Shown: one piece after another, positions 2,348 through 51,617 of the stretch
Position numbering within the stretch: the stretch's first letter is position 1
How the letters are laid out: the number at the start of each line of letters is the position of its first letter
The notes under the pieces: generated by a model
Told to the model about the DNA's origin: nothing
The model's input: only the letters and a program-made list of their open reading frames with translations
Database searches by the model: none
Position numbers and translations under genes: made by a program
Virus record (IMG/VR): IMGVR_UViG_3300050132_000038
Location: 62,001-126,000 of that record
Length of the DNA stretch: 64,000 nucleotides
Direction: 5' to 3' (one strand)

Positions 2348-2422
2348 TGGCAGGGGAGGAAGGGATCGAACCTTCGCGTGCTAGTGTCAAAGACTAGTGC
2401 CGTACCACTTGGCTACTCCCCT
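2348..2422 (-). tRNA. tRNA-Gln (anticodon TTG)
   Basis: Cloverleaf: AGGGGAG/CTCCCCT acceptor, GCC/GGC D stem, CTAGT-CT TTG AC-ACTAG anticodon arm, GAAGG TTCGATC CCTTC T arm, encoded CCA. Confidence 0.95.
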
Positions 2423-12538: not shown

Positions 12539-13735
12539 CTACGCACCCTTGACGCACATTACCTGCTTCAACACATGTACCACGTCTATCAGATCCTTTG
12601 AATTCTCGATCACGGTATCAATGTTCTTGTAGGCTGCTGGAATCTCATCGAGGACAGAATCATCCTTCAAGCATTCCACGCCCTCAGTTTGCCTCACCAG
12701 ATCAGCAACGGTGAAACGCCTACGAGCTTCCGTCCTGGACATCGAACGTCCCGCGCCATGCGAGCATGAGCAGTAACTCAGCTTGTTTCCCTTACCCTTA
12801 ACGATGTAAGATTTCTGGCCCATCGATCCAGGAATGATCCCTAGCTCACCTTCCTTCGCGGAGATAGCGCCCTTACGAGTGATCCACAGATTCTTCCCGA
12901 AGTGGTTCTCCTTCGTGACGTAATTGTGGTGGGTGTTAATGGCTTCCTGGGTTACAGAGAACTCGATTGGTATGTGCCGCTGTAATGCAGATATAACACT
13001 CAACATCATTACCTTGCGATTCAACAAGGCGTAGTCTTGTGCCCACCCTACAGCTTCCATGTATGCGTTGAAGTCTTCGCTGTCTTCGGGAAGGTACGCC
13101 AGATCCTCATCCGGGAGATTGATGAACCATCCTTGCATTGCCTTCTTCGCCTTCTCGATGAAGTGAGAAGCAATCATGTTGCCTATACCACGAGAACCAG
13201 AGTGGAGCATAATCCACACGTCCTGATTCTCGTCTATGCAGATTTCGATGAAGTGATTACCAGAACCAAGGGTACCTACTTGTTGTGCTGCCTTACGTGT
13301 AAGCCTATCGATTTTTCCGATCCCAGGGCTGCGTTCTTGGATAGAGGACAGTTCGGAACTATGAGTATCAGACCACTCCCTAGGAATTCGATCCTCCTTG
13401 TGTTCATAGCGACCAGTTGGTACATCCCGTTCGATCTGGTTCCGAATCTCTTTCAGGTTATCTGGTAGGTCTGAAGCTTTGAGCGACAGGCGGACAGCGT
13501 TCATGCCACACCCAAGATCTACGCCGACTGCCGCAGGGATGACTGCCTTCTCAGTTGCGATCACCGTACCGATTGTTGACCCCTTACCTGCGTGTACATC
13601 GGGCATGAGTGCCACACCGTTGTGGTGGATGAAGGGCAGACGCGCAATGTTCTTCGCCTGGTTTAACGCCGCGTCTTCAATATCGTCAGTCCACAACCTA
13701 ATCAACCTAGACCCTTCGTCAGCAATAACTTTCAT
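12539..13735 (-). CDS. rtcB: RtcB-family RNA 3'-phosphate/5'-OH ligase
   Basis: MPDVHAGKG, AVGVDLGCG, GTLGSGNHFIE, HSGSRG, THHNYV, HRKGA-like TRKGA, IPGSMG, SHGAGR, LDEIPAAYK motifs. Confidence 0.95.
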   Translation of the reverse strand: MKVIADEGSRLIRLWTDDIEDAALNQAKNIARLPFIHHNGVALMPDVHAGKGSTIGTVIATEKAVIPAAVGVDLGCGMNAVRLSLKASDLPDNLKEIRNQIERDVPTGRYEHKEDRIPREWSDTHSSELSSIQERSPGIGKIDRLTRKAAQQVGTLGSGNHFIEICIDENQDVWIMLHSGSRGIGNMIASHFIEKAKKAMQGWFINLPDEDLAYLPEDSEDFNAYMEAVGWAQDYALLNRKVMMLSVISALQRHIPIEFSVTQEAINTHHNYVTKENHFGKNLWITRKGAISAKEGELGIIPGSMGQKSYIVKGKGNKLSYCSCSHGAGRSMSRTEARRRFTVADLVRQTEGVECLKDDSVLDEIPAAYKNIDTVIENSKDLIDVVHVLKQVMCVKGA

Positions 13736-13736
13736 C

Positions 13737-13874
13737 TCAGTCCTCGTTACGATTCTTATGTTTGCCGTACCCTTGCTTCTGCAAGTGCTTGCGATTGGCA
13801 AACCTAGAGCATCGGTTAATCTTCAACCCATATCTTGCTACTGGGTTACGAACCGAAGTCCGTACCTTAGTCAT
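13737..13874 (-). CDS. 45-aa basic peptide (not in ORF track)
   Basis: MTKVRTSVRNPVARYGLKINRCSRFANRKHLQKQGYGKHKNRNED fills the gap exactly between flanking genes. Confidence 0.65.
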   Translation of the reverse strand: MTKVRTSVRNPVARYGLKINRCSRFANRKHLQKQGYGKHKNRNED

Positions 13875-13877
13875 ATG

Positions 13878-14213
13878 CTACTCCTTGTCGAATTGGTGCA
13901 GCATTTCAAGCATCGTGGCATACCGTGATTCAATCGCCCAATGGTCAACCAGCACCCTCTGGTTTGCGGAACCCCAGGGAAACCGCATGAACACCCAATC
14001 GAAGTCCCGCTCATCTGCTTGAGCTGCAGGCATAACCCGAACCTCGTGGCCATCTAGCTTAGTTAAGTCCTCTAGCATTATTCGGAGCATATTCGCGTGG
14101 CTATGGCTATGGGTAATCACGCACACCTCGTAGCCCTCGCTGGATAATCGAATTGCCTCCTCTAACATTCGAGTTGTGCGCCCTGTCCCACGTTGCGTAT
14201 CAACATCGTACAT
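13878..14213 (-). CDS. Small P-loop-like phage protein
   Basis: QRGTGRTTRML and VLVDHW motifs. Confidence 0.7.
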   Translation of the reverse strand: MYDVDTQRGTGRTTRMLEEAIRLSSEGYEVCVITHSHSHANMLRIMLEDLTKLDGHEVRVMPAAQADERDFDWVFMRFPWGSANQRVLVDHWAIESRYATMLEMLHQFDKE

Positions 14214-14225
14214 AAAAGATTCTCC

Positions 14226-15740
14226 TTAGACCACTGTCAGGGTTTCATTATCCTTGGCGTGTTTGAAGCTTCGATCCTTCTCGATTGCTGCCCGTGTGTC
14301 AGCCAGGTCTAACAGGATTTTCGACTTCGGCTTCTTTTGCCACGCCTGTAATTGTTTCAATACGCCTTGCTGCTCCTTCATCTTGGTATTTAGCGCCTGC
14401 TCTTCCAAACGTGTTAACTGGTCGAGCCGCAAAGCCAAGATTTGCTTCACTTGTTCGACAGTGAGTTTCAGCTTTTTCACAATGTACGCCGTAGGATCTG
14501 GTGTCTTCCGCACCGCGTAGATAACCGTATCCAACTTGTCCACTGCGAAGATCAACAGCTTGGAGTAGGCAATCGCTGCCTCCTGCTTATGCACACGATA
14601 CGCCAAACTCTTGAGTTCCAACTCGATACGCATCTTCAGCCATTGCACAATCAGCTGTGGAACAGACAAGGCCAAGAACTTGGTCTCGAACGTTGTAATG
14701 CCATCGACTGTTTGTGCTTCTCGCTTCGTTACGTTGATCTTGAACGAGCATGACTGACGAGTTGCCAGTTGCACCTTCTCCACATACTTATCGAACTGGG
14801 TAAAGTTGTATGCAGCTTTGCATTCGATGGTGAGGGTGGCTGAACCTTTAGAGTTATAGCACCGTTGGGTTTCAGGCATAGCCCTAACCTTATCAATGAA
14901 GCGTTGCAGGTTGGTACCTGGAGGCCAGTCAGAGATCACCATCTTCTTATGATCCCGGTCTACCTCAATGTCAGATTCAAACTTCACGTTCGTTTCCGAC
15001 TCCCTGAACATCTTGATCCACGCTTCCTTGTTCTCCTTGGTATTGAGAAGATGCCCGCCCCACTTGTGGGCGAACTTCAACGCTTTGGCGAAGTCTAAAG
15101 ATTGAAGCTTCTCACCTTTCAACAAACGTTCGAGTACACCGATCACTGATTCGGGAGTGAACGTTGGTAGTGAGGTAGTGATACCCACACCGATACCCTC
15201 ACCTCCGTTGATAATGACATTAGGCAACTGTGCAGGTAATGTTACTGGCTCAATATCCTTGTCGTCGTAGTTAGGCACAAATGTTGTAACATCTTTGTGG
15301 ATGTAGTCCGACAGGAAGAACGATTGACCGTACGCAGAGAGGCGCATATTCGTATAACGCATCGCAGCTGCGTCGTCGATCATGTTACCCCAGTTCCCCT
15401 TACCGTGAATGGCAGGCGTGGGGTGATTGACGATTGTAGTGATTGCACCTGCGATGGAACTATCTCCGTGAGGGTGCCACCTACCCATAACCAACCCCAC
15501 TACACGCGCTGTCTTCTCAAACGTGGAGAAGGACTCCTTAGACGCTCCCCACAGGATACGCCTCTGCACCGGCTTGAGACCGTCGTACAAGTCAGGCACT
15601 GACCGATCAAGATTAACTGCTATGGCGTACGTTGTCATGTTACGCTTACCGAAGTCGCGCAGTGCCTCGTCCTTCACATGCTTATCAGCAGCAGGTACCA
15701 GACCACCAGTAGGTGCCTTAGTTTTCTTCTTCGTTACCAT
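14226..15740 (-). CDS. gyrA: Type IIA topoisomerase subunit A (GyrA/ParC-like, no CTD)
   Basis: DGLKPVQRRILW, KTARVVG, HPHGDSSI, AAAMRYT (catalytic Tyr); only 504 aa. Confidence 0.92.
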   Translation of the reverse strand: MVTKKKTKAPTGGLVPAADKHVKDEALRDFGKRNMTTYAIAVNLDRSVPDLYDGLKPVQRRILWGASKESFSTFEKTARVVGLVMGRWHPHGDSSIAGAITTIVNHPTPAIHGKGNWGNMIDDAAAMRYTNMRLSAYGQSFFLSDYIHKDVTTFVPNYDDKDIEPVTLPAQLPNVIINGGEGIGVGITTSLPTFTPESVIGVLERLLKGEKLQSLDFAKALKFAHKWGGHLLNTKENKEAWIKMFRESETNVKFESDIEVDRDHKKMVISDWPPGTNLQRFIDKVRAMPETQRCYNSKGSATLTIECKAAYNFTQFDKYVEKVQLATRQSCSFKINVTKREAQTVDGITTFETKFLALSVPQLIVQWLKMRIELELKSLAYRVHKQEAAIAYSKLLIFAVDKLDTVIYAVRKTPDPTAYIVKKLKLTVEQVKQILALRLDQLTRLEEQALNTKMKEQQGVLKQLQAWQKKPKSKILLDLADTRAAIEKDRSFKHAKDNETLTVV

Positions 15741-15748
15741 TTTAGTCC

Positions 15749-18292
15749 TTACGCTGCTTTACGTTTAATGAGGGCCTTCTTAACGGCTACCACTTTCTTT
15801 ACGGGAGCTTCCTCGGCGTCATTGCCCGTAGAACTGGAAGGTAAGCCTAGCATGTCTCTTCGGTACTGAACATTATCGTCCATCAACTTTACAAAATCCA
15901 CCTTATCATCGGATTCGATAGCTTTGATACGTATCACCTTACGAGTCTCTGGATTCATTGCGAGGATCCGCATGAGATTTGCGTCTAGCTCACCCCACCC
16001 TTTAATATGATTTACAAGGACCGTGGAGGGGGCTTTGAACTTCAGCAGTTTCTTCTGCGTCTCGGATACAGTGTCTCCTGTAATCAACTGCCCTTTGTGA
16101 ACTGCATAGAACTCAGGGGCATTTGACACGTACACCATACCCTTCTTGAATAGTTCGGGTAGGTAACGGTAGAATAGGGTTAGCAGCAGACTATTGATGT
16201 GACAGTTACTGGAGACGATACCAGAAGGTAGAATGAAGTTATGATAACGCGGGACCGTCAAACAGTAAACAGGTACAGGCTCCTTCAACTTCTGAATCCG
16301 CATCTTCGACACAGGGGCAAACCCAAGGCCGGTCAGCTTGTCACAGCTCGAGGGATTGCGTGACTTGTTGGACGAGGGAAGGAATACCCGATCGCCAATC
16401 TTCAAGTCCTCTGATGCAACATACACCAGATTATCGAAGTTTGTCGGCTGAGTACGACGACCATACATTGCATTGGTGACCAAACACATCCACTTATGCG
16501 ACATATCCACTTTGTACTTGGTACCTCCGATCTCCAAGGCAACGAGCGTGTCCACATTCTTAACTAGCTCTGCTGTTGCAGGTGCCCATGTCTCTTTAGC
16601 GCCAGTCCACACCGGAACTTCGAAGATGGGAGCTGCTACAGAGTACGGGCCACCGCGGTCTACGGCAGTAAGTTCGTAAATCTCCCGCTCATACTCTGAA
16701 CCATTTATACGAACTCGAATTTTGGTGTCACGCACAAACGGGCCGTCTGGGTCCGGGTCGGCCAAGCAGATGATCTTACCGATAGTCAGCTTCGAGTAGG
16801 GATCACTTGCTTTCACGTCGTAGCCAATTGCTGCCAGAATGTTAATCACTTCCTCTGACTCTAATGCCTTGCCCTTATTATCCTTTAAGCTGTTGAGAAT
16901 TTTCCCGCGAAGTGGAAGCACCCCTTGATATGGAAAACGAGCCTCCTTGGTCGTGCCCCCGGCACTGTCTCCCTCTACTAAGAACAGCTCCCGGTCCTGC
17001 GGTTTAGTCCGACTGTCGAATGCGGCATACTTTGCGGGTAGCCCATTGCGCTTTACCGCGTTGAGCTTGCCTGCTGCCTTCTTCGACATTGTGAACTTGG
17101 TCTTCAACTCATTCATCTGCGTAGCGCGGTCTGCAATGCGCTGAGCCAATGCCTTGTTCTCTTTGAAGAACTTCGTTGTCGCAAGCGTGAGGGCCGTTTC
17201 AAAGTCCTTACCCACTCGATCGTCAGTCAGCTTTGCCTTATCCTGGGAACTGAACTGTGCCTTGTGCAACTTTGCATTCACGAGGCCCACCAAACCTTCC
17301 TTCAAGTCGGCCTCACGGAATACCGGAACCTGCTTGCCGTCCACCTTCTTCGTTTTGATGAATGGCTTCAAGCCTGCATACAGAGCACCCGTTACTGAAT
17401 CAACGTGCTTACCGCCCTGCCCGTTGTTCAAACCATTAGTGAAGCCTCGCACATCACAGCCATCATAGTTTGAGAATGCGACAACCACATCAGCAAGGCT
17501 TGAGCTGTTCTCAAACATCTGACGCTCGCCCTCAGTCTTTAGCTTCAGCATACGCTGGGCTACGTACTCCGTCGGACCCTTCTTCGACAGAAATTGTTTT
17601 GCACCCTTTGCGCTACTTATAGTGATGGAGAACCCAGGGTTGAGGTATGACATAATCTCAGCCCACTCTACCGCCATTGATGCAGGAAATGACTTGGCTG
17701 AGAAGATGGTGGAGTCAGGCTTGAAATGGATCACCGTACCAGATGTAGGGCGCTTACCATTCCACAGCTTAGGTGCTGTCTTAGCCGCAGCAACAGGGGA
17801 CGTAAGTTTACCTTTCTTGAAACCAATCGTGTGCCATTTGCCTTTGAAGAAGGTACACGCGTCGAAGAAGTCAGCCGTGGCATTCGTGCCCTTCGCGCCT
17901 ACGCCGTGCGTGCCCACTGAAATCTTGTAAGCGTCATCACGATATTTGCCTGACGTATGCAATTCCCCGAACACTGCTTGCATAGTGGACATGGTGAAAA
18001 TCTTTTCACCGCTTCCCGTAGTTGCTTCCCACTTCTTAATGCCCTGCGGAATGCCGTGTCCATTGTCCGTCACCCAGTACGAACCGTCTGAGTCAACATG
18101 GAGATGCACCGAGTCGTTACGCCCAGCCAAGTGCTCGTCCAGTCCATTGTCGAGGAGCTCTCGGGCGCAAAGCCATACCCCGGAGGCATCCACACTGCCA
18201 AGATACATAGAGGGGTTTCGGCGGATTGATTCCGGGAATCGTAATGTCTCGATGTGACTGCTATCGTACTCTGCTACCTTCTTGGTTGCCAT
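15749..18292 (-). CDS. gyrB: Type IIA topoisomerase subunit B (GyrB/ParE-like) with intein
   Basis: ELLDNGLDE, DNGHGIP, GTHGVG, LFLVEGDSAGG, PLRGKILN, ADPDPDG...HINSLLLTLF. Confidence 0.95.
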   Translation of the reverse strand: MATKKVAEYDSSHIETLRFPESIRRNPSMYLGSVDASGVWLCARELLDNGLDEHLAGRNDSVHLHVDSDGSYWVTDNGHGIPQGIKKWEATTGSGEKIFTMSTMQAVFGELHTSGKYRDDAYKISVGTHGVGAKGTNATADFFDACTFFKGKWHTIGFKKGKLTSPVAAAKTAPKLWNGKRPTSGTVIHFKPDSTIFSAKSFPASMAVEWAEIMSYLNPGFSITISSAKGAKQFLSKKGPTEYVAQRMLKLKTEGERQMFENSSSLADVVVAFSNYDGCDVRGFTNGLNNGQGGKHVDSVTGALYAGLKPFIKTKKVDGKQVPVFREADLKEGLVGLVNAKLHKAQFSSQDKAKLTDDRVGKDFETALTLATTKFFKENKALAQRIADRATQMNELKTKFTMSKKAAGKLNAVKRNGLPAKYAAFDSRTKPQDRELFLVEGDSAGGTTKEARFPYQGVLPLRGKILNSLKDNKGKALESEEVINILAAIGYDVKASDPYSKLTIGKIICLADPDPDGPFVRDTKIRVRINGSEYEREIYELTAVDRGGPYSVAAPIFEVPVWTGAKETWAPATAELVKNVDTLVALEIGGTKYKVDMSHKWMCLVTNAMYGRRTQPTNFDNLVYVASEDLKIGDRVFLPSSNKSRNPSSCDKLTGLGFAPVSKMRIQKLKEPVPVYCLTVPRYHNFILPSGIVSSNCHINSLLLTLFYRYLPELFKKGMVYVSNAPEFYAVHKGQLITGDTVSETQKKLLKFKAPSTVLVNHIKGWGELDANLMRILAMNPETRKVIRIKAIESDDKVDFVKLMDDNVQYRRDMLGLPSSSTGNDAEEAPVKKVVAVKKALIKRKAA
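16205..16741 (-). mobile_element. 179-aa class 3 mini-intein in GyrB
   Basis: Insert PFVRDTKI...SHKW...VYCLTV...HNFILPSGIVSSN followed by +1 Cys; removing it restores DPDG-CHINSLLL. Confidence 0.88.
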
Positions 18293-27246: not shown

Positions 27247-27441
27247 TTACACTTTCGTACATAGTAAGTCATAGACGGTATGACGAAACAGATCATGTGC
27301 CGCTATGATCTTCTCAGCAACGTCCTTTGGTATACCATCAAAAATATCCCCACGTTGGTCTGCCACGTCTACAGTACCGTCAGGACGTGTTCCCCAGATC
27401 ATGTAGATGCCAATCTTCTCGTCCACATACTTTTCACGCAT
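27247..27441 (-). CDS. Hypothetical protein
   Basis: Packed ORF with RBS. Confidence 0.65.
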   Translation of the reverse strand: MREKYVDEKIGIYMIWGTRPDGTVDVADQRGDIFDGIPKDVAEKIIAAHDLFRHTVYDLLCTKV

Positions 27442-27450
27442 CGTTATTCC

Positions 27451-27663
27451 TTAATCTTCAAGTCGAAGACGTGCGTCCTTAACCCGATCGAGATTGCGTT
27501 CACTTAGATTCTCTATGATGAAGCACCCATGACCGTCCTCATGCGAAAGGGTAAGGCCATGCACACGACATAGTTCGTCGTACGCCGCTATGAAGTCCTC
27601 AACCTTCTGCGGAGACTCCACTCGCGCACCCTGTATTTTATCCCACCGCTTAACTTTACTCAT
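27451..27663 (-). CDS. Hypothetical protein
   Basis: Packed ORF; LSHEDGHGCFIIE. Confidence 0.65.
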   Translation of the reverse strand: MSKVKRWDKIQGARVESPQKVEDFIAAYDELCRVHGLTLSHEDGHGCFIIENLSERNLDRVKDARLRLED

Positions 27664-28370
27664 GATCTTTCCTTTGCCAGAGTAGAGACTACAGGTAGTC
27701 CATCTTTACGAGGGCGGCCTCGGGACAGCTCGTCAATTCGACGGTTAGCTTTTGGTGCCACGGTAGCACGGTACTCCTCGCCACCCAGTACCCAGCCTGC
27801 GTGAGCATACTTGATAATTGTCTTGGCGTGCTGCTCAGATACAGACTCCGCTACAAGCTTCGAGTATGCCGCCTGGCGCGCGAAGGGAGTATTGCCCAAG
27901 GCCCAGTACTCAGCGTGAGGCGTCAAATTTGTATCTAGGGAAACGCCTAGGTTGTGTAGCTGACTAGATGCTTTGCTAGGTAACTGATGCGTAGCAGCCT
28001 CTGCGTCAATTAGAACAGAGCAACGTAGGAACCACTCAGCGGAGTCTACAACGGTAGCGCGATAACGGCCTTGCCACAGCGTGCCACTCCGCTTGTAGGC
28101 CCTATTGTATAGAGCAACATATGTGCGGCCTACACCTTGAATTGTTTTCGATAAACTTTGATCGTTACCTGGGGTAACAAGTAGTTGAACACCGCTAGGG
28201 AGCATAGAGTACGCATGGATCTTCAAGTCGTGGCGTTTGGCATTCGCTACGAGCAGATTATAAAACTTTGCTTGATCGGCCAGGGCAGGGAACGGATTGA
28301 CTCCAGATATGGTGTCAAGAATCACGTACTGTACTTCGTTAGGAATGAATAGACGGGGAAGGCGTGCCAT
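27660..28370 (-). CDS. RAYT/Y1 transposase-like protein, catalytically degenerate
   Basis: MARLPRL, IHAY.ML, LLVTP, YNRAYKRSGTLWQGRY, YWALGNTP, GWVLG, RGRPRK are retained; HUH reads SGVQLL and the catalytic Tyr is absent. Confidence 0.85.
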   Translation of the reverse strand: MARLPRLFIPNEVQYVILDTISGVNPFPALADQAKFYNLLVANAKRHDLKIHAYSMLPSGVQLLVTPGNDQSLSKTIQGVGRTYVALYNRAYKRSGTLWQGRYRATVVDSAEWFLRCSVLIDAEAATHQLPSKASSQLHNLGVSLDTNLTPHAEYWALGNTPFARQAAYSKLVAESVSEQHAKTIIKYAHAGWVLGGEEYRATVAPKANRRIDELSRGRPRKDGLPVVSTLAKERS

Positions 28371-28421
28371 TTGTTTTCTCTTTTTATGTTGTTAGTTAGC
28401 GCCTCTCGGGGCGCCAGCATG

Positions 28422-28805
28422 TTACGCTTTGAGTTGACCTTCGACTGCACGCTTGATACGATCTTCAGTGCGCTGCTTCAACCAGTTAAGTGCTTGAACT
28501 ACGTGATGCAGTGCCATATCATTCTCAGCGCAGGGATAGGGACCAATCTGAAATGAGTTAAGCCGATCTGCTACGATTGCCAACAGGACTTCGTGAGTAA
28601 CGCCGTTGATACCATTCACAGGGATCGGCCCGTTCTGGAAATTGATATTCACAATAGGGCTTGCGTATTCTATACCTTCTGGGTCTGGAGAGTAGTACGC
28701 AACATACTCGTGGCTAGCACCGCCGGCACCTGGCTCGTCTGTTACGGCAATAAATAGTTCATTCTTTTCGTTGCCTGCTACTTTGTGGCTCGTGACTTGT
28801 CGCAT
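28422..28805 (-). CDS. tad1: Tad1-family anti-defence sponge protein
   Basis: GAGGASHEY...INFQNGP...GVTHEVLLAIVADRLNSFQIGPYPCAENDMALHHVVQALNWLKQRTEDRIKRAVEG follows the recalled Tad1 consensus over its full length. Confidence 0.8.
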   Translation of the reverse strand: MRQVTSHKVAGNEKNELFIAVTDEPGAGGASHEYVAYYSPDPEGIEYASPIVNINFQNGPIPVNGINGVTHEVLLAIVADRLNSFQIGPYPCAENDMALHHVVQALNWLKQRTEDRIKRAVEGQLKA

Positions 28806-28825: not shown

Positions 28826-29407
28826 TTAAGCTGCAATTACAAAACGATAGTAGAAGTGTTTCTGTAGATTATGTCCCCAGGCTTCTGACTCGATGCACCG
28901 TAGCCACAGCCTAAAGGATGAATCGTCCTGCCAGTCAACCGGATTCGTATCAAACATAACACCTACTTTATGTCCAGACTTTGTTGCTTTGCCCAATAGG
29001 TCTAGCCAGAAGCGCTTCCCATCATCACTCTGAGACGCATCTGAGACTATATAGTTATACCTATGCAGAAGAATCTCGAACACTACAAACTTCGCTAATC
29101 CGGTAACGGCTGAGTTACCTGCGCGGCGCCACACCGCTACTTGGGTAACGCTATTTGAGGGTAGCTGAAGTAACTTCTCTGCTTTGAGATGTACTAGATA
29201 CACGATCTCCGCTTCATCGGAAATCGCAACAATGTACGATTCTTTACTAGAGATCTTAAACTCTACCAGTGGTAACTCATTATAAATCGAGATTTGCTCA
29301 TGTGTGTACTTCGTGTACAGCTCTTGTAACTTACGTCTGTTGTCTTCAAAATCTTTTAGACCGAACTGAACTGGGTCTACTAGATATGGGGCCGAAGTTA
29401 CTTCCAT
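28826..29407 (-). CDS. GNAT-fold-like hypothetical protein (paralog of 36837..37415)
   Basis: VWRR...GLAKFVVF..LLHRY.YIVSD.SQS..GKRFW.DLL. Confidence 0.75.
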   Translation of the reverse strand: MEVTSAPYLVDPVQFGLKDFEDNRRKLQELYTKYTHEQISIYNELPLVEFKISSKESYIVAISDEAEIVYLVHLKAEKLLQLPSNSVTQVAVWRRAGNSAVTGLAKFVVFEILLHRYNYIVSDASQSDDGKRFWLDLLGKATKSGHKVGVMFDTNPVDWQDDSSFRLWLRCIESEAWGHNLQKHFYYRFVIAA

Positions 29408-29841: not shown

Positions 29842-30083
29842 CGCCTACTCCGTTGGTGGGGTATATGCTATATTTACAGGAATTCGCATATCGCATTTTT
29901 AATGTGTAAGAGGAATTCACACATTCCACAATTTTACACAAATCCAAAACACAGGATTTATCTTTAGACTGACAGATAGCCATAGAATTATAGAACAAGG
30001 CTCTGTTACGTATCTTAGCCTCGGGACTAGCCGGATTGATAGCTGTATTGATCTCTCCTAAACTAGTTAAAGAGGAACTCAAA

Positions 30084-31136
30084 ATGGCTGATCTTGTTAA
30101 TCCCACGGTACTGAGCACTGGCGGTCTCATGGGTAGTGGTTATGGCAACAACGGTGGCTTGATGGGCGGGGATGGTATTGGCTCCTTGCTTATCGGTGCT
30201 CTTCTGTTTGGCGGTGGCCTGGGTGGTGGCTTTGGTGGCCGTAATGGTTTGGCTGCTACTGCTGGGGATACTGTGACTACTGCTCATCTTCAATCGGCAT
30301 TGAATCAACAAACCCAGAGCCAGAATACCAACAACATTCTGCAAAGCTTGGCTACCATCCAGCAGCTGATCCCTGAGAACGAGGGTCGCGTTCAAGCGGC
30401 TATCGCCGGTGCTCAGATCGCTTTGGGCAATCAAGCTTCACAAGGTCAACTGGCGGCAGCTAACCAAGCTTCGCAAGGGCAGTTGCAAGTTGCTGCTTCC
30501 ACGGCCCTGCTGACCAACAACGTTGCAGACGCACGCCACAACATCAACGATAACATCCATGCAGGTGTGCTTTCCCAACTCGCAGGGCAAGCCGCGATTA
30601 CGGCAGGTGTAGTTGAAGCCCGCAAGGATATTAACGATAACATTCACCTGGGTCGCTCGGAAGCAGCAAACGGTTTCTCTAGTGCTTCGTTGCAAGCTGC
30701 AAACTATAGTGCCGCAACCCAGTTGGGTATTGCTAACCTGGGTCTTCAGACTGCTCAACAAACGTCTGTTCTTACGGATCAAATCCGTGATGACGGCGAT
30801 AAGACTCGTTCCCTCATTGTTGCTCAGTACGAAGCTAACCTGCAACGGTTGCTCACGACTGCTCAGAATGAGATTATCGAACTGCGCGGTGATCGCAACA
30901 TGCGTGAAGCACATCGTGGCACGGAAGTTACTGTTAGCCAGAACGTGTCGCAAGCTTCTGCTCAGGCTCAACAGCAACAACAGCAACAACAGCAGTTTGC
31001 TATCCTTTCGCAAATTGCAGCTAGCTTGTCCGGTCTTACCCAGATCGCTCATGCTACGAACCAGAATGTGATTTCTGGTAACAGTGGTGCTGTGCAGACT
31101 GGTCCCCAGAATGCCAATCCCACGAACGTCGCCTAG
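30084..31136 (+). CDS. Gly-rich/hydrophobic N-terminus plus Gln/Asn/Ala-rich coiled-coil protein
   Basis: AGAGGA RBS; GSLLIGALLFGGGLGGGFGG; DGDKTRSLIVAQYE; poly-Q; C-terminal NQNVISGNSGAVQTGPQNANPTNVA. Confidence 0.85.
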   Translation: MADLVNPTVLSTGGLMGSGYGNNGGLMGGDGIGSLLIGALLFGGGLGGGFGGRNGLAATAGDTVTTAHLQSALNQQTQSQNTNNILQSLATIQQLIPENEGRVQAAIAGAQIALGNQASQGQLAAANQASQGQLQVAASTALLTNNVADARHNINDNIHAGVLSQLAGQAAITAGVVEARKDINDNIHLGRSEAANGFSSASLQAANYSAATQLGIANLGLQTAQQTSVLTDQIRDDGDKTRSLIVAQYEANLQRLLTTAQNEIIELRGDRNMREAHRGTEVTVSQNVSQASAQAQQQQQQQQQFAILSQIAASLSGLTQIAHATNQNVISGNSGAVQTGPQNANPTNVA

Positions 31137-31167
31137 TCTGTAAGTAGATTAGGTGTATGGAGGATCA

Positions 31168-31196
31168 GGGGTTCAGTCTCACGAGGGTTGAACCCC
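31168..31196 (+). terminator. Intergenic hairpin
   Basis: ggggttcagtctc-acga-gggttgaacccc. Confidence 0.65.
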
Positions 31197-31218
31197 ATCT
31201 GAAAGACGGAGGACTAAT

Positions 31219-31401
31219 ATGTTAAGCGCACCACTGTTTGCAGCTCGTCAGGACCAGCTGTTGTTTCAACTACGTAACATGAGCCTGCTTAGTGCTATGC
31301 GTCTGCAGGCGTCAAAAGCAACTAACCAGACTGTCATCACCGGCAACTACGGAGCGGTGCAGACGGGCTACCAGAACGCGAATCCTACGAACGTAGGTTG
31401 A
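31219..31401 (+). CDS. 60-aa protein sharing the C-terminal motif of 30084..31136
   Basis: GGAGG RBS; ends NQTVITGNYGAVQTGYQNANPTNVG. Confidence 0.75.
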   Translation: MLSAPLFAARQDQLLFQLRNMSLLSAMRLQASKATNQTVITGNYGAVQTGYQNANPTNVG

Positions 31402-31441
31402 ATTCATTTATACACACGTAAGTACCTTATAAGGAGTTATC

Positions 31442-31771
31442 ATGCCTAATGTTATTGGTGGTTCAATTCATGGGGACGGCCCCAGTGTGATTGGTGGATC
31501 GATTGGTGAGGAGCATCATTACGAAGGGGTGGCTACGCCCGCACCGGTGCGTACCTACGCGCAAACTATTGGTGATGGTGTTACCACAGTGTTTGCAATT
31601 ACTCACAACCTGGGAACTTTGGACACGCAGACTCAAGTGTACAATCCGATCACGGGTCTTCAAGTACCGCCGACGGCGTACACTGCTGTTCACACGAGTG
31701 CTAACGTTACGACGTTGACCTTCACCACAGCACCTGCTGCCGGTGCTGCACGGGCTGTTATCGAAGCCTAA
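31442..31771 (+). CDS. THNL-motif small beta protein with two VIGGSI repeats
   Basis: AQTIGDG...ITHNLGT.D. Confidence 0.8.
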   Translation: MPNVIGGSIHGDGPSVIGGSIGEEHHYEGVATPAPVRTYAQTIGDGVTTVFAITHNLGTLDTQTQVYNPITGLQVPPTAYTAVHTSANVTTLTFTTAPAAGAARAVIEA

Positions 31772-31772
31772 G

Positions 31773-31800
31773 TGAAGCCGGGAGGATCCTCCCGGCTTCA
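31773..31800. repeat. 28-bp perfect palindrome / hairpin
   Basis: TGAAGCCGGGAGGATCCTCCCGGCTTCA. Confidence 0.85.
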
Positions 31801-31852
31801 TCGTTAGACGCCAGTTCTCCCCACTGAGCCAGTTCCAATCTATGGAGTTACC

Positions 31853-32164
31853 ATGGCTGACGTTATTGGTGGTTCAATTAGCGGTGAAGGTCCTTCTGTT
31901 ACCGGCGGATCGATTGGTAGCGGATCAGGTACCAGTGGACCTGTAGTACCTACCGTACCAGTAGATGTAACTTCGTTCACCTTTAGTCAACCTACTCCTG
32001 CAGCCTCTTGGTTGATTACGCATAACTTAAATGGGTTCCCTTCGGTCACTACCACCGACTTAGCAGGTAATGTAATAGTTGGGCAGGTGCAGTATCTAAA
32101 CGCTAATACTGTATTGGTTGTATTCTCTACACCAGTAGCAGGGGTAGCATATTTGAATATGTAG
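31853..32164 (+). CDS. THNL-motif small beta protein with GGSI repeats
   Basis: VIGGSISGEGPSVTGGSIG; WLITHNLNGFPSV. Confidence 0.8.
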   Translation: MADVIGGSISGEGPSVTGGSIGSGSGTSGPVVPTVPVDVTSFTFSQPTPAASWLITHNLNGFPSVTTTDLAGNVIVGQVQYLNANTVLVVFSTPVAGVAYLNM

Positions 32165-44160: not shown

Positions 44161-45180
44161 CTAACTTACAGTGTTAAGAATCTTTCGTCTAATAGATTTT
44201 ATTTTCTTCCGCATAGCCTCGTCTACATCTAGGCTGGAAACCCAGGTGCGAAAGAAGTCTTCCGTCTTGAACGACACAGCCTGTCCCTCGGTTAAGTCTT
44301 CGGTGAGGACCATCTGCAGGTCCTCCTTCGACTTGAATGGCTTAATCATTACGATGTTTGAAAACTTACCGTAGTCCGATGCCGATACATCCGCCCCATC
44401 CTGGATGACTAGCTTCACTAGATTGAACCCACCCTCTGGAATAGTTGCCAGGTCATCTCGAGTGTTCAGTACGATAGTGTGCAGCTTGTATTTGGGGTCG
44501 TGCTTGACCAGCCGGATTTCGTAATCCTTCGGCCCGTTGAATTCTATGTGATGGAAATACTTTGGAAGGCTTTCTCCAAAGTTTTGTTGATATAGTGTTC
44601 CGCTGTAATACGTGTTACGGACTCTATGAGCGGTATGCAAATGTCCAGCGACGATAACGGACTTGGAGTCTGTAAGATCATCTGATCCCATGACACGCCC
44701 CGCGTCGTTCTTACTTCCGCGAACTTCTTTATGGTAGACATTGAGAGCCTTACTATCGAAGGATTCGTGAGGGTACGGGAGGAACCGAACTGGAGCACCG
44801 TCGATCTCTACCGTCTTTGGTTTAGTGTAGAACTTCACGTTAGACTTAGAGTACAAGAGCTTCAACAGTTCTAGGGAATGCCCGGTGTCCGGTGTTTCTC
44901 CATAGAGGTCATGGTTCCCTAGGATGATATGGAACGTGAAGTCATCGTTTGATGCAAGGAATCTTGAGAGGGCCATCATCCCCTGATACGAACCCCTGGG
45001 TGAATCAAAAATATCCCCGTACAGCAGAGTGGTATTGATCCCATGCTTCCTCCCGTATTGTAAAACCTTTTCCATCTCCTCCGTTACCATTTGATCGGAG
45101 TCCTGCACGTACTTCGATAGTCCACCCGACCCGTCTGCGCTCGACAGGTGCAGGTCCCCGATGCCCAAAAATTCAGCCAC
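44161..45180 (-). CDS. SbcD/Mre11 (T4 gp47-like) recombination nuclease subunit
   Basis: GDLHL, GDIFD, LGNHD, AGHLH, YSGTL..NFGE metallophosphoesterase motifs. Confidence 0.8.
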   Translation of the reverse strand: MAEFLGIGDLHLSSADGSGGLSKYVQDSDQMVTEEMEKVLQYGRKHGINTTLLYGDIFDSPRGSYQGMMALSRFLASNDDFTFHIILGNHDLYGETPDTGHSLELLKLLYSKSNVKFYTKPKTVEIDGAPVRFLPYPHESFDSKALNVYHKEVRGSKNDAGRVMGSDDLTDSKSVIVAGHLHTAHRVRNTYYSGTLYQQNFGESLPKYFHHIEFNGPKDYEIRLVKHDPKYKLHTIVLNTRDDLATIPEGGFNLVKLVIQDGADVSASDYGKFSNIVMIKPFKSKEDLQMVLTEDLTEGQAVSFKTEDFFRTWVSSLDVDEAMRKKIKSIRRKILNTVS

Positions 45181-50660: not shown

Positions 50661-51617
50661 TTACTCCTTGGTTAGAGTTGGTTGGCAGTAAGCAATTTCT
50701 AAGAAGGCTGCCAAGGACGCCGCGGTCGCCCTAAGTTCTTGCTGTCGCTCTTTAGACTGTCCCGCTAGTATTCGAATCCGTTTTATATTAGGTGCTGAAA
50801 ACGGTTTAACTTTAAATGGGGCCTCGACCTGTAAGGCAATTGCGGTCATAGGGACCTGCTCTAAGTCATCCATGCTATAAATTTTGTGAAGGTAGCCGCT
50901 ATTCTTCTTAGCGGCCCTCTCTACTTTTTCTACAGTAACGATGGCAGGTTTAACTTTCTTAATGACCCGGGACAGGTGCCCCTCAGAGGTTACTTGAGAA
51001 TAGCCGAGCAGATTACATTTCTCGATCTTCCATAGCTCATCTGACTTGTAGTTTATGTAGTGGAAAGCGGGATCAGAATTATTTGCCAGTGTGCCCGCGT
51101 AGAAGGTGTTTCTAAATCGTAATTCTCTGTGCAGGTGTCCAGCTACAGTAACAGCATCACTCTTCTTCATTCCTACCTTAAAGTCCAAGCCTAACTTCTT
51201 TTCAACTTCGGGGACAGCAGCGTGGACTACATTCAGAGCATCGAACATTAGTCGCGCATGAGGCCACGGATTAAAGTTTACGTGAGCTCCGTCTATGTCT
51301 ACCACTTCGGCCCTAGAACTGAAGACGGTAACGTTATGAGCTCTGAGCAGATCTAGGCTACAGGAGGATGCTTCCCGATTGTTAAAGAGATCATGATTAC
51401 CAGCGATGATCCAGAAGCGTAGGTCATTGTACTCGGCAAATAGTTTTCGTAGCTTGCGGACAACGGTAAGGTCACCATCCTCTACAAGGTCCCCGTACTG
51501 AAAGATATTTTGTATCCTCCTCTTTCTCGCAATGTCACAGACGTGAGAAATCCTGAACAGGCGCGATTTCATGTTGGTAGGTTCGAGATGCAGATCTGCT
51601 ATCCCTAGTGCTCTCAT
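50661..51617 (-). CDS. Second SbcD/Mre11-like metallophosphoesterase
   Basis: ADLHL, YGDLVE, AGNHD, AGHLH, YAGTL. Confidence 0.75.
   Translation of the reverse strand: MRALGIADLHLEPTNMKSRLFRISHVCDIARKRRIQNIFQYGDLVEDGDLTVVRKLRKLFAEYNDLRFWIIAGNHDLFNNREASSCSLDLLRAHNVTVFSSRAEVVDIDGAHVNFNPWPHARLMFDALNVVHAAVPEVEKKLGLDFKVGMKKSDAVTVAGHLHRELRFRNTFYAGTLANNSDPAFHYINYKSDELWKIEKCNLLGYSQVTSEGHLSRVIKKVKPAIVTVEKVERAAKKNSGYLHKIYSMDDLEQVPMTAIALQVEAPFKVKPFSAPNIKRIRILAGQSKERQQELRATAASLAAFLEIAYCQPTLTKE

What the first reader, a model, noticed from the sequence alone, without database searches (positions are those of the whole stretch)
27660..28370. Catalytically dead RAYT-like protein kept intact in a phage
Seen: the whole RAYT scaffold is preserved without stops, but the HUH metal motif (normally NHVHLL) reads SGVQLL and the catalytic Tyr helix (normally YIELNP) reads LIDAEA. 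I saw no REP arrays or terminal repeats nearby. I recall a Burkholderiaceae family with the same VQLLVTP variant (unverified). Inference: a domesticated nucleic-acid-binding protein captured from the host, possibly a hairpin binder or a dominant-negative decoy, located next to the anti-defence gene tad1.
Basis: partly seen in the sequence, partly recalled or inferred. Interest (0 to 1): 0.65.

Follow-up and report, generated by a model that had tools for sequence, protein, structure and literature searches.

The report
Dead RAYT-like protein in jumbo phage
A peat-soil jumbo phage carries an intact, selectively maintained copy of a transposase-like protein that has lost every residue needed to cut DNA; it comes from a large Burkholderiales family in which such "dead" versions are common and strongly conserved, so it most likely binds DNA rather than cutting it.

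Summary
Window 27660-28370 (minus strand) is an intact 236-aa ORF. Its model (pLDDT 89.5) matches E. coli TnpA_REP best (4er8, Z 13.2). The two HUH histidines, the nucleophile Tyr and the Y+4 metal ligand read G60, Q62, L120 and E124.

It belongs to the long, REP-less branch of Y1 transposase-like proteins (Quentin subclass 2.1, Bertels Group 1, TIRYT). The nearest relatives (40-47% identity) are single-copy Burkholderiales chromosomal genes. In all 80 best genomes the gene lies directly upstream of gltB. Most of these have also lost the catalytic residues, at least 7-8 times independently, yet show dN/dS of 0.02-0.10.

The phage resembles Ralstonia phage phiRSL1 and Burkholderia phage BcepSaruman. 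Its gene has phage-like GC and dN/dS of 0.13 against a sister contig. It follows a true Tad1 homologue in three diverged phage contigs. No REP, TIR or repeated hairpin family exists in the 219-kb genome.

Best reading: a host-derived, non-catalytic DNA-binding protein with an invariant AT-hook-like RGRPRK tail. The anti-defence or decoy idea rests on adjacency alone: 158 other Tad1-carrying phages lack this gene. I rate it a new variant of a known kind, of moderate interest.

The parts
27660..28370 (-). 236-aa RAYT-like (Y1 HUH-fold) ORF with no catalytic residues
28179..28196 (-). Position of the HUH motif, reading SGVQLL (G60-V61-Q62 in place of H-u-H)
27996..28013 (-). Position of the Y---NP motif, reading LIDAEA (L120 for the nucleophile Tyr, E124 for the N/Q metal ligand, A125 for P)
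28071..28076 (-). W99-Q100, the conserved W[EQ] motif of class-2 Y1 proteins, retained
   Evidence: W99 invariant; motif defined in PMC6006769
27705..27722 (-). RGRPRK (residues 217-222), an AT-hook-like motif. G218-R219-P220 are invariant in the family, and the tail has low pLDDT
   Evidence: Pfam AT_hook weakly hit in 2 members
28422..28805 (-). Tad1 (Thoeris anti-defence 1) homologue directly upstream in the same orientation. The adjacency is kept in L002 and L009
28399..28415 (-). Unique 7-bp stem-loop in the 51-nt tad1/RAYT-like spacer. It is not a repeat family
27451..27663 (-). 70-aa ORF of unknown function whose ATG overlaps the RAYT-like stop (ATGA). It is absent in the sister contig L002
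28826..29407 (-). 193-aa ORF (phrog_1349) upstream of tad1, in the same order in L002

Best explanation
The ORF encodes a folded, non-catalytic member of the long, REP-less branch of Y1 HUH transposase-like proteins (Quentin subclass 2.1, Bertels Group 1 RAYT, TIRYT type). An ancestor of this phiRSL1/BcepSaruman-like jumbo phage took the gene from a Burkholderiales bacterium. There the orthologue is a mostly single-copy chromosomal gene, directly upstream of gltBD in Burkholderiaceae and Herbaspirillum, that has repeatedly lost its HUH and Tyr residues while staying under strong purifying selection.

The shared, selected activity is therefore binding, not cutting. I infer that the TnpA_REP-like fold recognises a DNA structure or sequence (single-stranded or hairpin DNA by analogy with 4er8), and that the invariant basic RGRPRK tail adds AT-hook-type minor-groove contacts.

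In the phage the protein sits among small accessory genes that I take, from context only, to be early or host-takeover genes. It most likely does what the host protein does, either copying or competing with it on host or phage DNA.

Shown: the fold, the loss of all four catalytic residues, purifying selection, the host family and its synteny, and the absence of repeats. Inferred: DNA binding as the function, the mode of binding, and the role in infection.
For: Fold: best PDB match is TnpA_REP 4er8, Z 13.2 over model residues 4-191.

Catalytic positions: G60, Q62, L120 and E124, with motif registration checked against ISDra2.

Selection: dN/dS is 0.13 against L002 (9 nonsynonymous, 21 synonymous differences). 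That is similar to the neighbours tad1 (0.18) and the 193-aa gene (0.115). Against L009 it is 0.16, with dS saturated.

Host family: 3603 word-search hits and at least 560 species genomes. All 80 best loci carry an intact ORF just upstream of gltB. The gene is single copy in B. cenocepacia and Herbaspirillum. The family is in 133 of 301 Burkholderiales genomes. Dead-site bacterial pairs give dN/dS of 0.02-0.10.

Repeated loss: at least 7 HUH changes and 8 Tyr changes on a 50-row tree built without the motif columns.

Scaffold retention: the phage protein keeps 61 of the 76 columns that are at least 90% conserved in bacteria, including the many invariant Arg residues, W99 and RGRP. Its pI is 9.7.

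Age of acquisition: gene GC is 0.51 and GC3 0.48, against 0.485 for the phage and 0.61-0.65 for the bacterial loci. This points to an old, ameliorated acquisition.

Phage kinship: topoisomerase II is 63% identical to phiRSL1 and 56% to BcepSaruman/Sauron, all phages of Burkholderiaceae.

Family description: subclass 2.1 has median length 238 aa, motifs NHVH / W[EQ] / YIELNP, an SS motif, a C-terminal extension and no REPs (PMC6006769).
Against: No DNA-binding experiment exists for any member of this subfamily, and I found no paper on it.

No candidate DNA target was found. The phage genome has no repeated hairpins, and the bacterial flanks show no convincing TIRs.

I could not read model coordinates, so I could not exclude substitute residues near the old active site. 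Q62, D122 and E124 could in principle still hold a metal.

The region after the old Tyr helix is degraded in the phage clade: a 5-residue deletion, W134 lost, and no NPV. The phage protein may therefore have drifted from the host function.

The host of this phage is unknown. It is inferred only from related phages and from the peat habitat.
Confidence: 0.55

Rival explanations
1. Anti-defence or counter-defence protein working with or beside Tad1. It might be a decoy that soaks up a host factor, or a blocker that sits on DNA structures recognised by a host defence nuclease.
For: It lies directly downstream of a real Tad1 in a run of small same-strand accessory genes. The tad1 then RAYT-like order is kept in three contigs at 96% and 59% protein identity, while the genes downstream differ.
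Against: 158 GenBank phage records carry Tad1 and none carries this gene, so Tad1 does not need it. There is no PADLOC hit. The three contigs are related phages, so the shared order may be plain ancestry. The bacterial orthologues are core-like, syntenic and slowly evolving, unlike typical defence or anti-defence genes.
Confidence: 0.15
2. Mimic or competitor of the host's own orthologue (regulatory hijack). The phage copy binds the same chromosomal sites as the host protein and rewires whatever the host protein controls.
For: It keeps 61 of 76 host-conserved columns and the RGRPRK tail. Relatives of the phage infect Burkholderiaceae, a group in which the family is widespread.
Against: The function of the host protein is unknown, and so is the host. 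A terminator-like hairpin follows the bacterial gene, so it is not simply co-transcribed with gltB. This reading is a special case of the best explanation, not a separate mechanism.
Confidence: 0.2
3. It is still an enzyme: a nuclease or strand-transferase using non-canonical residues.
For: Q62, D122 and E124 are polar or acidic and could bind a metal. H52, Y54, Y84 and Y103 are conserved.
Against: All four canonical positions are replaced. The helix that carries the nucleophile (residues 110-127) has no Tyr. The identity of these positions varies freely among relatives (GAVQ, RQVQ, DQVQ, DRLH and others; V, L, F or M at the Tyr site), which is not how a working active site behaves. H52, Y84 and Y103 are scaffold residues shared with members whose sites are intact.
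Confidence: 0.05
4. A functionless passenger: a decaying remnant of a transposase that simply has not yet acquired stops.
For: The Pfam score is below threshold. The region after the Tyr helix is degraded. In L002 the stop codon is lost and the ORF runs into the next gene.
Against: dN/dS is 0.13-0.16. The gene is intact in three diverged contigs and in fragments from other peat runs. The fold prediction is high-confidence. 80% of host-constrained columns are retained.
Confidence: 0.05

Closest known systems
TnpA_Y1 subclass 2.1 (Quentin et al. 2018, PMC6006769) = Group 1 RAYT (Bertels et al. 2017, PMC5581495) = TIRYT (Di Nocera et al. 2013, PMC3733652)
   Same: Length of about 236 aa (subclass median 238). 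The N-terminal MARxxRL start, the W[EQ] motif (W99-Q100), the SS motif (S135-S136) and a C-terminal extension beyond the Tyr helix are present. There are no REPs, copy number is low, and the family is prevalent in Betaproteobacteria.
   Different: The defining NHVH and YIELNP motifs are gone (SGVQ, LIDAEA). There are no flanking TIRs. The gene is in a phage. Quentin et al. set such motif-less sequences aside as probably non-functional, whereas here they are under purifying selection.
E. coli TnpA_REP (RayT/YafM), PDB 4er8
   Same: Best structural match: Z 13.2, 151 residues aligned, rmsd 3.1, covering model residues 4-191. This includes the part that follows the Tyr helix.
   Different: Only 11-12% identity. 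TnpA_REP has HUH and Tyr, cuts and rejoins REP ssDNA, and lies among REPs. The phage protein has none of these and carries an extra helix plus an RGRPRK tail.
Burkholderiaceae/Oxalobacteraceae chromosomal orthologues upstream of gltBD (annotated 'transposase' or 'REP element-mobilizing transposase RayT')
   Same: 40-47% identity over the full length (E about 1e-54). The same invariant residues and the same RGRPRK tail are present. Most are equally devoid of HUH and Tyr, for example GAVQLL with VVELAP.
   Different: They are cellular, syntenic and high-GC, and they keep PVR...WSSY after the Tyr-helix position. The phage clade sits on a long separate branch and has a 5-residue deletion there.
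IS200/IS605 TnpA (IS608, ISDra2)
   Same: They share the HUH core fold (Z 7.5-8.9), and the profile aligns motif for motif.
   Different: They are short (about 130-150 aa) dimeric true transposases with Y---Q and subterminal hairpins. None of these features is present here.

Membership tests
Y1 HUH transposase superfamily (Pfam PF01797 Y1_Tnp) | Sequence match above the curated threshold | tested here: not met
   22.2 bits against a gathering score of 23, E 1.7e-4. 64 of 65 relatives match at E up to 0.1, best 4.4e-14.
Y1 HUH transposase superfamily (Pfam PF01797 Y1_Tnp) | HUH-nuclease core fold | tested here: met
   AF2 model pLDDT 89.5. 4er8 Z 13.2; IS608 and ISDra2 Z 7.5-8.9.
Y1 HUH transposase superfamily (Pfam PF01797 Y1_Tnp) | HUH metal-binding histidines | tested here: not met
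   G60 and Q62 at the two His positions.
Y1 HUH transposase superfamily (Pfam PF01797 Y1_Tnp) | Catalytic Tyr, with Q/N four residues on | tested here: not met
   L120 and E124.
RAYT / TnpA_REP (NCBIfam NF047646) | Equivalog score | tested here: not met
   20.6 bits against a cut-off of 80.
RAYT / TnpA_REP | Flanking or genome-wide REP/REPIN repeats | tested here: not met
   No flanking repeats. No 14-mer occurs more than 5 times and no repeated hairpin stem exists in the 219-kb genome.
Subclass 2.1 / Group 1 RAYT / TIRYT | Length of about 238 aa with a conserved C-terminal extension, the W[EQ] and SS motifs, and no REPs | tested here: met
   236 aa; W99-Q100; S135-S136; helices 162-207 plus a tail.
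Subclass 2.1 / Group 1 RAYT / TIRYT | NHVH and YIELNP motifs | tested here: not met
   SGVQ and LIDAEA.
Subclass 2.1 / Group 1 RAYT / TIRYT | Terminal inverted repeats (GGGGWSAS type) around the gene | tested here: not met
   The spacer upstream is 51 nt, the downstream gene overlaps, and no TIR was found.
Burkholderiales gltB-linked dead-site orthologue group | Full-length similarity and the shared invariant residues, including RGRP | tested here: met
   E 1e-54 to 1e-47 with 94% coverage. 61 of 76 conserved columns kept.
Burkholderiales gltB-linked dead-site orthologue group | Chromosomal position upstream of gltBD | tested here: not met
   The phage context is tad1 upstream and a 70-aa ORF downstream. 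80 of 80 bacterial loci have gltB downstream.
Known anti-defence proteins | Homology to a described anti-defence or defence family | tested here: not met
   No PADLOC hit. The only PHROG hit is a weak one of unknown function. PDB sequence search found nothing.
Known anti-defence proteins | Inhibition of a defence system | not testable with these tools
   This needs an infection or plaque assay.

The most novel reading that the evidence does not exclude
Burkholderiales have turned a Group 1 RAYT into a non-catalytic, sequence- or structure-specific DNA-binding factor that is nearly a core gene. A jumbo phage lineage has stolen it to mimic or jam that factor during infection, possibly as part of a counter-defence cassette with Tad1. 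That would be the first described pseudo-enzyme derived from an HUH transposase with a cellular role, and the first case of a phage weaponising it.
Probability: 0.15. Interest if true: 0.75.

Novelty: new variant of a known kind. Interest (0 to 1): 0.5.

Why it matters
RAYTs are the textbook case of a bacterial transposase kept by its host, but their cellular role is still unknown. Work so far has assumed that catalysis is needed, and motif-less sequences were discarded as non-functional.

Here a large Burkholderiales branch, and a phage copy of it, show strong purifying selection after complete loss of the catalytic residues. Some selected function of this fold therefore does not depend on cutting DNA.

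That makes the function testable by binding-site mapping in tractable Burkholderia or Paraburkholderia strains. It also adds a host-derived DNA-binding pseudo-enzyme to the accessory gene set of jumbo phages.

Tried and rejected
- **REP, REPIN or TIR association.** None flanks the gene, none is in the whole phage genome, and two bacterial loci show nothing convincing.
- **The tad1/RAYT-like spacer hairpin as a target repeat.** It is unique in the genome, its loop is flipped in L002, and it is absent in L009.
- **An independent C-terminal HTH domain.** Residues 126-236 folded alone give pLDDT 68 and pTM 0.36, against 0.85 for the whole protein. I did not search with this low-quality model. The region aligns to TnpA_REP's own C-terminal part.
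- **Homologues in cultured phages.** None in INPHARED by tblastn at E up to 1e-3.
- **IMG/VR.** The only other full-length hit is L010: 41% identity, NAVH with YIDK, on a linear 171-kb contig next to NMT1_3 and cyclophilin genes, with no topoisomerase II or Tad1 match. Its viral nature is doubtful, so I did not count it as a phage copy. L011 is a 56-aa truncated copy beside what look like phage morphogenesis genes.
- **Metagenome scan with a phage-clade profile.** Only two distant relatives, 30-35% identical.
- **PADLOC, PHROGs, PDB sequence search.** Nothing informative.
- **ESM Atlas.** Only the same family.
- **RNA evidence.** No RNA run holds the stretch. Laying contigs from peat runs showed only that fragments and variants of the locus occur in three further studies.
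- **Correlated loss of HUH and Tyr.** The test is underpowered: 4 independent pairs, p about 0.5.
- **Literature.** Searches for a described function of this subfamily, or of dead HUH transposases, found nothing.
- **Complex prediction.** Not used, because the report claims no protein-protein contact.
- **The large representative search.** Not used, because the word search had already resolved the family.

Full report
**1. What is there**

Window 27660-28370 on the minus strand is a 236-aa ORF without stops. Its first residues, MARLPRL, coincide with the N-terminus of all relatives, so the start codon is right. SGVQLL is residues 59-64 (window 28179-28196) and LIDAEA is residues 120-125 (window 27996-28013); I read both.

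Sequence models see only a shadow of a Y1 transposase. Pfam Y1_Tnp scores 22.2 bits against a cut-off of 23. NCBIfam REP-associated tyrosine transposase scores 20.6 against 80.

The fold is nevertheless clear. An AlphaFold2 model built on 65 relatives has mean pLDDT 89.5 and pTM 0.85. Its best solved match is E. coli TnpA_REP bound to a REP hairpin (4er8). Foldseek gives E 2e-5. VIA-align gives Z 13.2, with 151 residues aligned at rmsd 3.1 over model residues 4-191. The IS608 and ISDra2 transposases follow at Z 7.5-8.9.

A profile of the family aligned to ISDra2 TnpA puts that enzyme's HVH on the profile's k-v-q and its catalytic Y132 on the profile's position 120. The assignment of the dead positions therefore does not rest on my own alignment alone. 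In the phage protein the two histidines are G60 and Q62. The nucleophile Tyr is L120. The residue four positions on, which is the third metal ligand in IS608-type enzymes (established knowledge of that family), is E124. The helix that should carry the nucleophile contains no Tyr at all.

**2. The genome around it**

The window is part of a 218,861-bp IMG/VR virus record with matching ends of 127 bp. GC is 48%. It encodes two topoisomerase II subunits, RtcB and SbcD-like proteins.

The large topoisomerase subunit is 63% identical to that of Ralstonia jumbo phage phiRSL1 and 56% to Burkholderia phages BcepSaruman and BcepSauron. The host is therefore probably a member of the Burkholderiaceae, but this is an inference. 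The locus occurs in peat metagenomes from several studies.

The gene lies in a run of small minus-strand ORFs of unknown function. The gene immediately upstream (28422-28805) is a genuine Tad1 homologue, matching PDB 8kbb at E 2e-18. The gene immediately downstream (27451-27663, 70 aa) overlaps the stop codon by ATGA.

There are no inverted or direct repeats around the gene. In the whole genome no 14-mer occurs more than five times, and no hairpin stem of 9 bp or more occurs twice. The one small stem-loop in the 51-nt spacer before the gene is unique. Its loop is flipped in the sister contig, and it is missing in the third contig.

**3. Relatives**

The word search returned 3603 proteins.

Two are phage-like:
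- P0001 is 96% identical. Its 2.7-kb contig L002 has the same order: the 193-aa gene, then tad1, then this gene.
- P0002 is 59% identical. On its 1.3-kb contig L009 the upstream fragment is again Tad1, 76% identical over 67 residues, while the downstream genes differ.

Everything else is bacterial at 40-47% identity and 230-360 aa, annotated 'transposase' or 'RayT'. The genera are Burkholderia, Paraburkholderia, Caballeronia, Trinickia, Pandoraea, Herbaspirillum, Noviherbaspirillum and Undibacterium.

In all 80 best species genomes the ORF is intact and gltB lies about 320-400 nt downstream in the same orientation. ompW is usually upstream. This includes the reduced-genome leaf-nodule symbionts Candidatus Burkholderia verschuerenii and crenata. 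Noviherbaspirillum has the gene at a different locus.

The gene is single-copy in the two genomes I searched whole. In a sample of 301 Burkholderiales genomes, 133 have the family at E 1e-30 or better. Most have one copy, and a few have up to six. Both mobile-looking and fixed forms therefore exist in the order.

Among cultured phages the protein is absent: 50,697 records searched by tblastn at E up to 1e-3. The only other full-length hit in IMG/VR is of doubtful viral nature.

**4. The dead site is a family trait, not a phage oddity**

Of the 121 closest relatives:
- 82 lack both histidines, the Tyr and the Asn.
- 14 have all four (NH[LMV]HLL with YIELNP).
- The rest are intermediate.

I built a 50-row tree without the motif columns. 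Intact forms are scattered across it. The HUH state changes at least 7 times and the Tyr state at least 8 times.

The Burkholderia, Paraburkholderia, Caballeronia and Trinickia clade is uniformly dead (GAVQ, RQVQ, GAVH, QAVH; V, L or M at the Tyr site). Yet these genes evolve under strong constraint. Nei-Gojobori dN/dS is 0.02-0.10 in nine pairs with dS of 0.15-0.9.

The phage clade (window, P0001, P0002) is well supported and sits on a long branch of its own. P0002 still has the second histidine (HKVH) but already has L at the Tyr site. The Tyr was therefore lost before these two phage lineages split, and the last His was lost afterwards, inside the phage lineage. The Q at that position is a single-base change from His and recurs in many lineages.

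**5. Is the phage copy maintained?**

Against L002 the gene shows 9 nonsynonymous and 21 synonymous differences. That gives dN/dS of 0.13, similar to its neighbours tad1 (0.18) and the 193-aa gene (0.115). Against L009 dN is 0.40 with dS saturated, for a nominal ratio of 0.16.

The protein keeps 61 of the 76 columns that are at least 90% conserved among 46 non-redundant bacterial relatives. These include R3, R6, R82, R102, R165, R210, R211, W99, W156, W193 and G218-R219-P220.

Its GC (0.51; GC3 0.48) is that of the phage, not of the bacterial loci (0.61-0.65). The acquisition is therefore old, or the donor had low GC.

In L002 the 70-aa gene is missing, the stop codon is gone, and the reading frame continues into the next small gene, giving 300 aa. 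The extreme C-terminus evidently tolerates additions.

**6. Place in the literature**

Quentin et al. 2018 (PMC6006769) divide Y1 proteins into classes. Their subclass 2.1 corresponds to Bertels' Group 1 and to most TIRYTs of Di Nocera et al. It has median length 238 aa, motifs NHVH, W[EQ] and YIELNP, an SS motif after the Tyr helix, a C-terminal extension, no REPs, and prevalence in epsilon-, beta- and deltaproteobacteria. That is the scaffold seen here.

They state that sequences lacking the core motifs 'correspond to non-functional proteins', and they removed them. Bertels et al. 2017 (PMC5581495) describe Group 1 as the largest and most IS-like RAYT group. Di Nocera et al. 2013 (PMC3733652) report HUH and Tyr conserved in all their TIRYTs.

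I found no paper on catalytically dead members, on the gltB-linked Burkholderiales gene, or on such a gene in a phage. The library does not cover most subscription journals.

**7. How it most likely works**

Shown: a TnpA_REP-like fold is kept, the catalytic apparatus is not, and selection acts on the rest.

Inferred: the selected activity is nucleic-acid binding. Four things support this:
- The fold's known job is to hold a DNA hairpin and adjacent single strand (4er8).
- The invariant residues are dominated by arginines and aromatic residues.
- The protein is basic (pI 9.7).
- The invariant RGRPRK near the disordered C-terminus has the core of an AT-hook, and two relatives weakly hit Pfam AT_hook.

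The C-terminal third is not a separable domain. Folded alone it gives pTM 0.36, and it superposes on TnpA_REP's own C-terminal part.

What the phage gains is open. The simplest reading is that it brings its own version of a host DNA-binding factor, to copy or compete with it.

**8. The anti-defence idea**

The adjacency to tad1 is real and is kept in three contigs. But these are related phages, Tad1 occurs in 158 other phage records that lack this gene, and nothing links the family to defence. I rate this reading at about 0.15.

**9. Limits**

- I could not read model coordinates. The absence of substitute active-site residues therefore rests on alignment and on how freely these positions vary, not on geometry.
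- The host is inferred.
- The phage clade has only three members, two of them on short contigs.
- No expression data exist.

Noticed in passing
window 28422-28805 (-): A genuine Tad1 (Thoeris anti-defence 1) homologue: PDB 8kbb at E 2e-18, phrog_2428. My Pfam scan gave no hit, although the sister copy on L002 carries a precomputed PF24729 Acb2_Tad1_hairpin hit. The nearest cultured-phage homologues are in Agrobacterium/Rhizobium phages (49%) and Burkholderia phage FLC9 (44%).
   Followed up: partly
window 27451-27663 (-) versus L002 1990-2030: The 70-aa gene after the RAYT-like ORF is absent in the 96%-identical sister contig. There the RAYT-like ORF has lost its stop and is fused in frame to the homologue of window ORF 27247-27441, giving 300 aa. 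A 1-nt deletion at 27667 in a contig from another peat run may be a similar tail variant.
   Followed up: partly
window 28399-28415: A unique GC-rich stem-loop lies between tad1 and the RAYT-like gene (-11.7 kcal/mol, z -2.8). In L002 the stem is kept but the loop is the reverse complement, which suggests a hairpin inversion. It is absent in L009.
   Followed up: yes
window 28826-29407 (-): A 193-aa protein (phrog_1349, unknown function) has weak Cas6-like hits in two libraries: Pfam Cas6b_N at E 0.028 and PADLOC Cas6 at E 0.0023. It is conserved in L002 with dN/dS of 0.115.
   Followed up: no
window 30036-32164 (+): A divergent run of glycine-rich ORFs starts here. Repeated motifs of the type VIGGSI.G.GPSV.GGSIG and a poly-Q stretch recur in several consecutive ORFs. 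They may be fibre or structural proteins.
   Followed up: no
window 12539-18292 (-), 44161-45180 (-), 50661-51617 (-): RtcB RNA ligase, two topoisomerase II subunits and two SbcD-like nuclease subunits. The topoisomerase ties the phage to phiRSL1 (63%) and to BcepSaruman/Sauron (56%).
   Followed up: partly
L003, L007, L012-L091 (bacterial loci): In all 80 loci the bacterial orthologue lies between ompW and gltBD. It is followed by a terminator-like hairpin. After that comes a conserved AT-rich region with an inverted CCAATTA...TAATTGG element and a TTGATTCGTCGCGTATATT box, probably the gltB promoter.
   Followed up: partly
G216 and others: Some Burkholderiales genomes carry 4-6 copies of the family with near-equal scores, so multi-copy and possibly still mobile members coexist with the fixed single-copy ones.
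   Followed up: no
L011 935-1105: A 56-aa truncated copy of the family lies at the edge of a 37-kb viral contig, next to what look from the sequence like phage morphogenesis genes. It may be a prophage inserted into the bacterial gene.
   Followed up: no
L010 5001-5834: A 171-kb linear IMG/VR contig carries a 41%-identical homologue that keeps the Tyr and the second His (NAVH, YIDK). It is flanked by NMT1_3 and cyclophilin genes, so its viral status is doubtful.
   Followed up: partly
window 2348-2422 (-): A single tRNA-Gln (anticodon TTG) gene.
   Followed up: no
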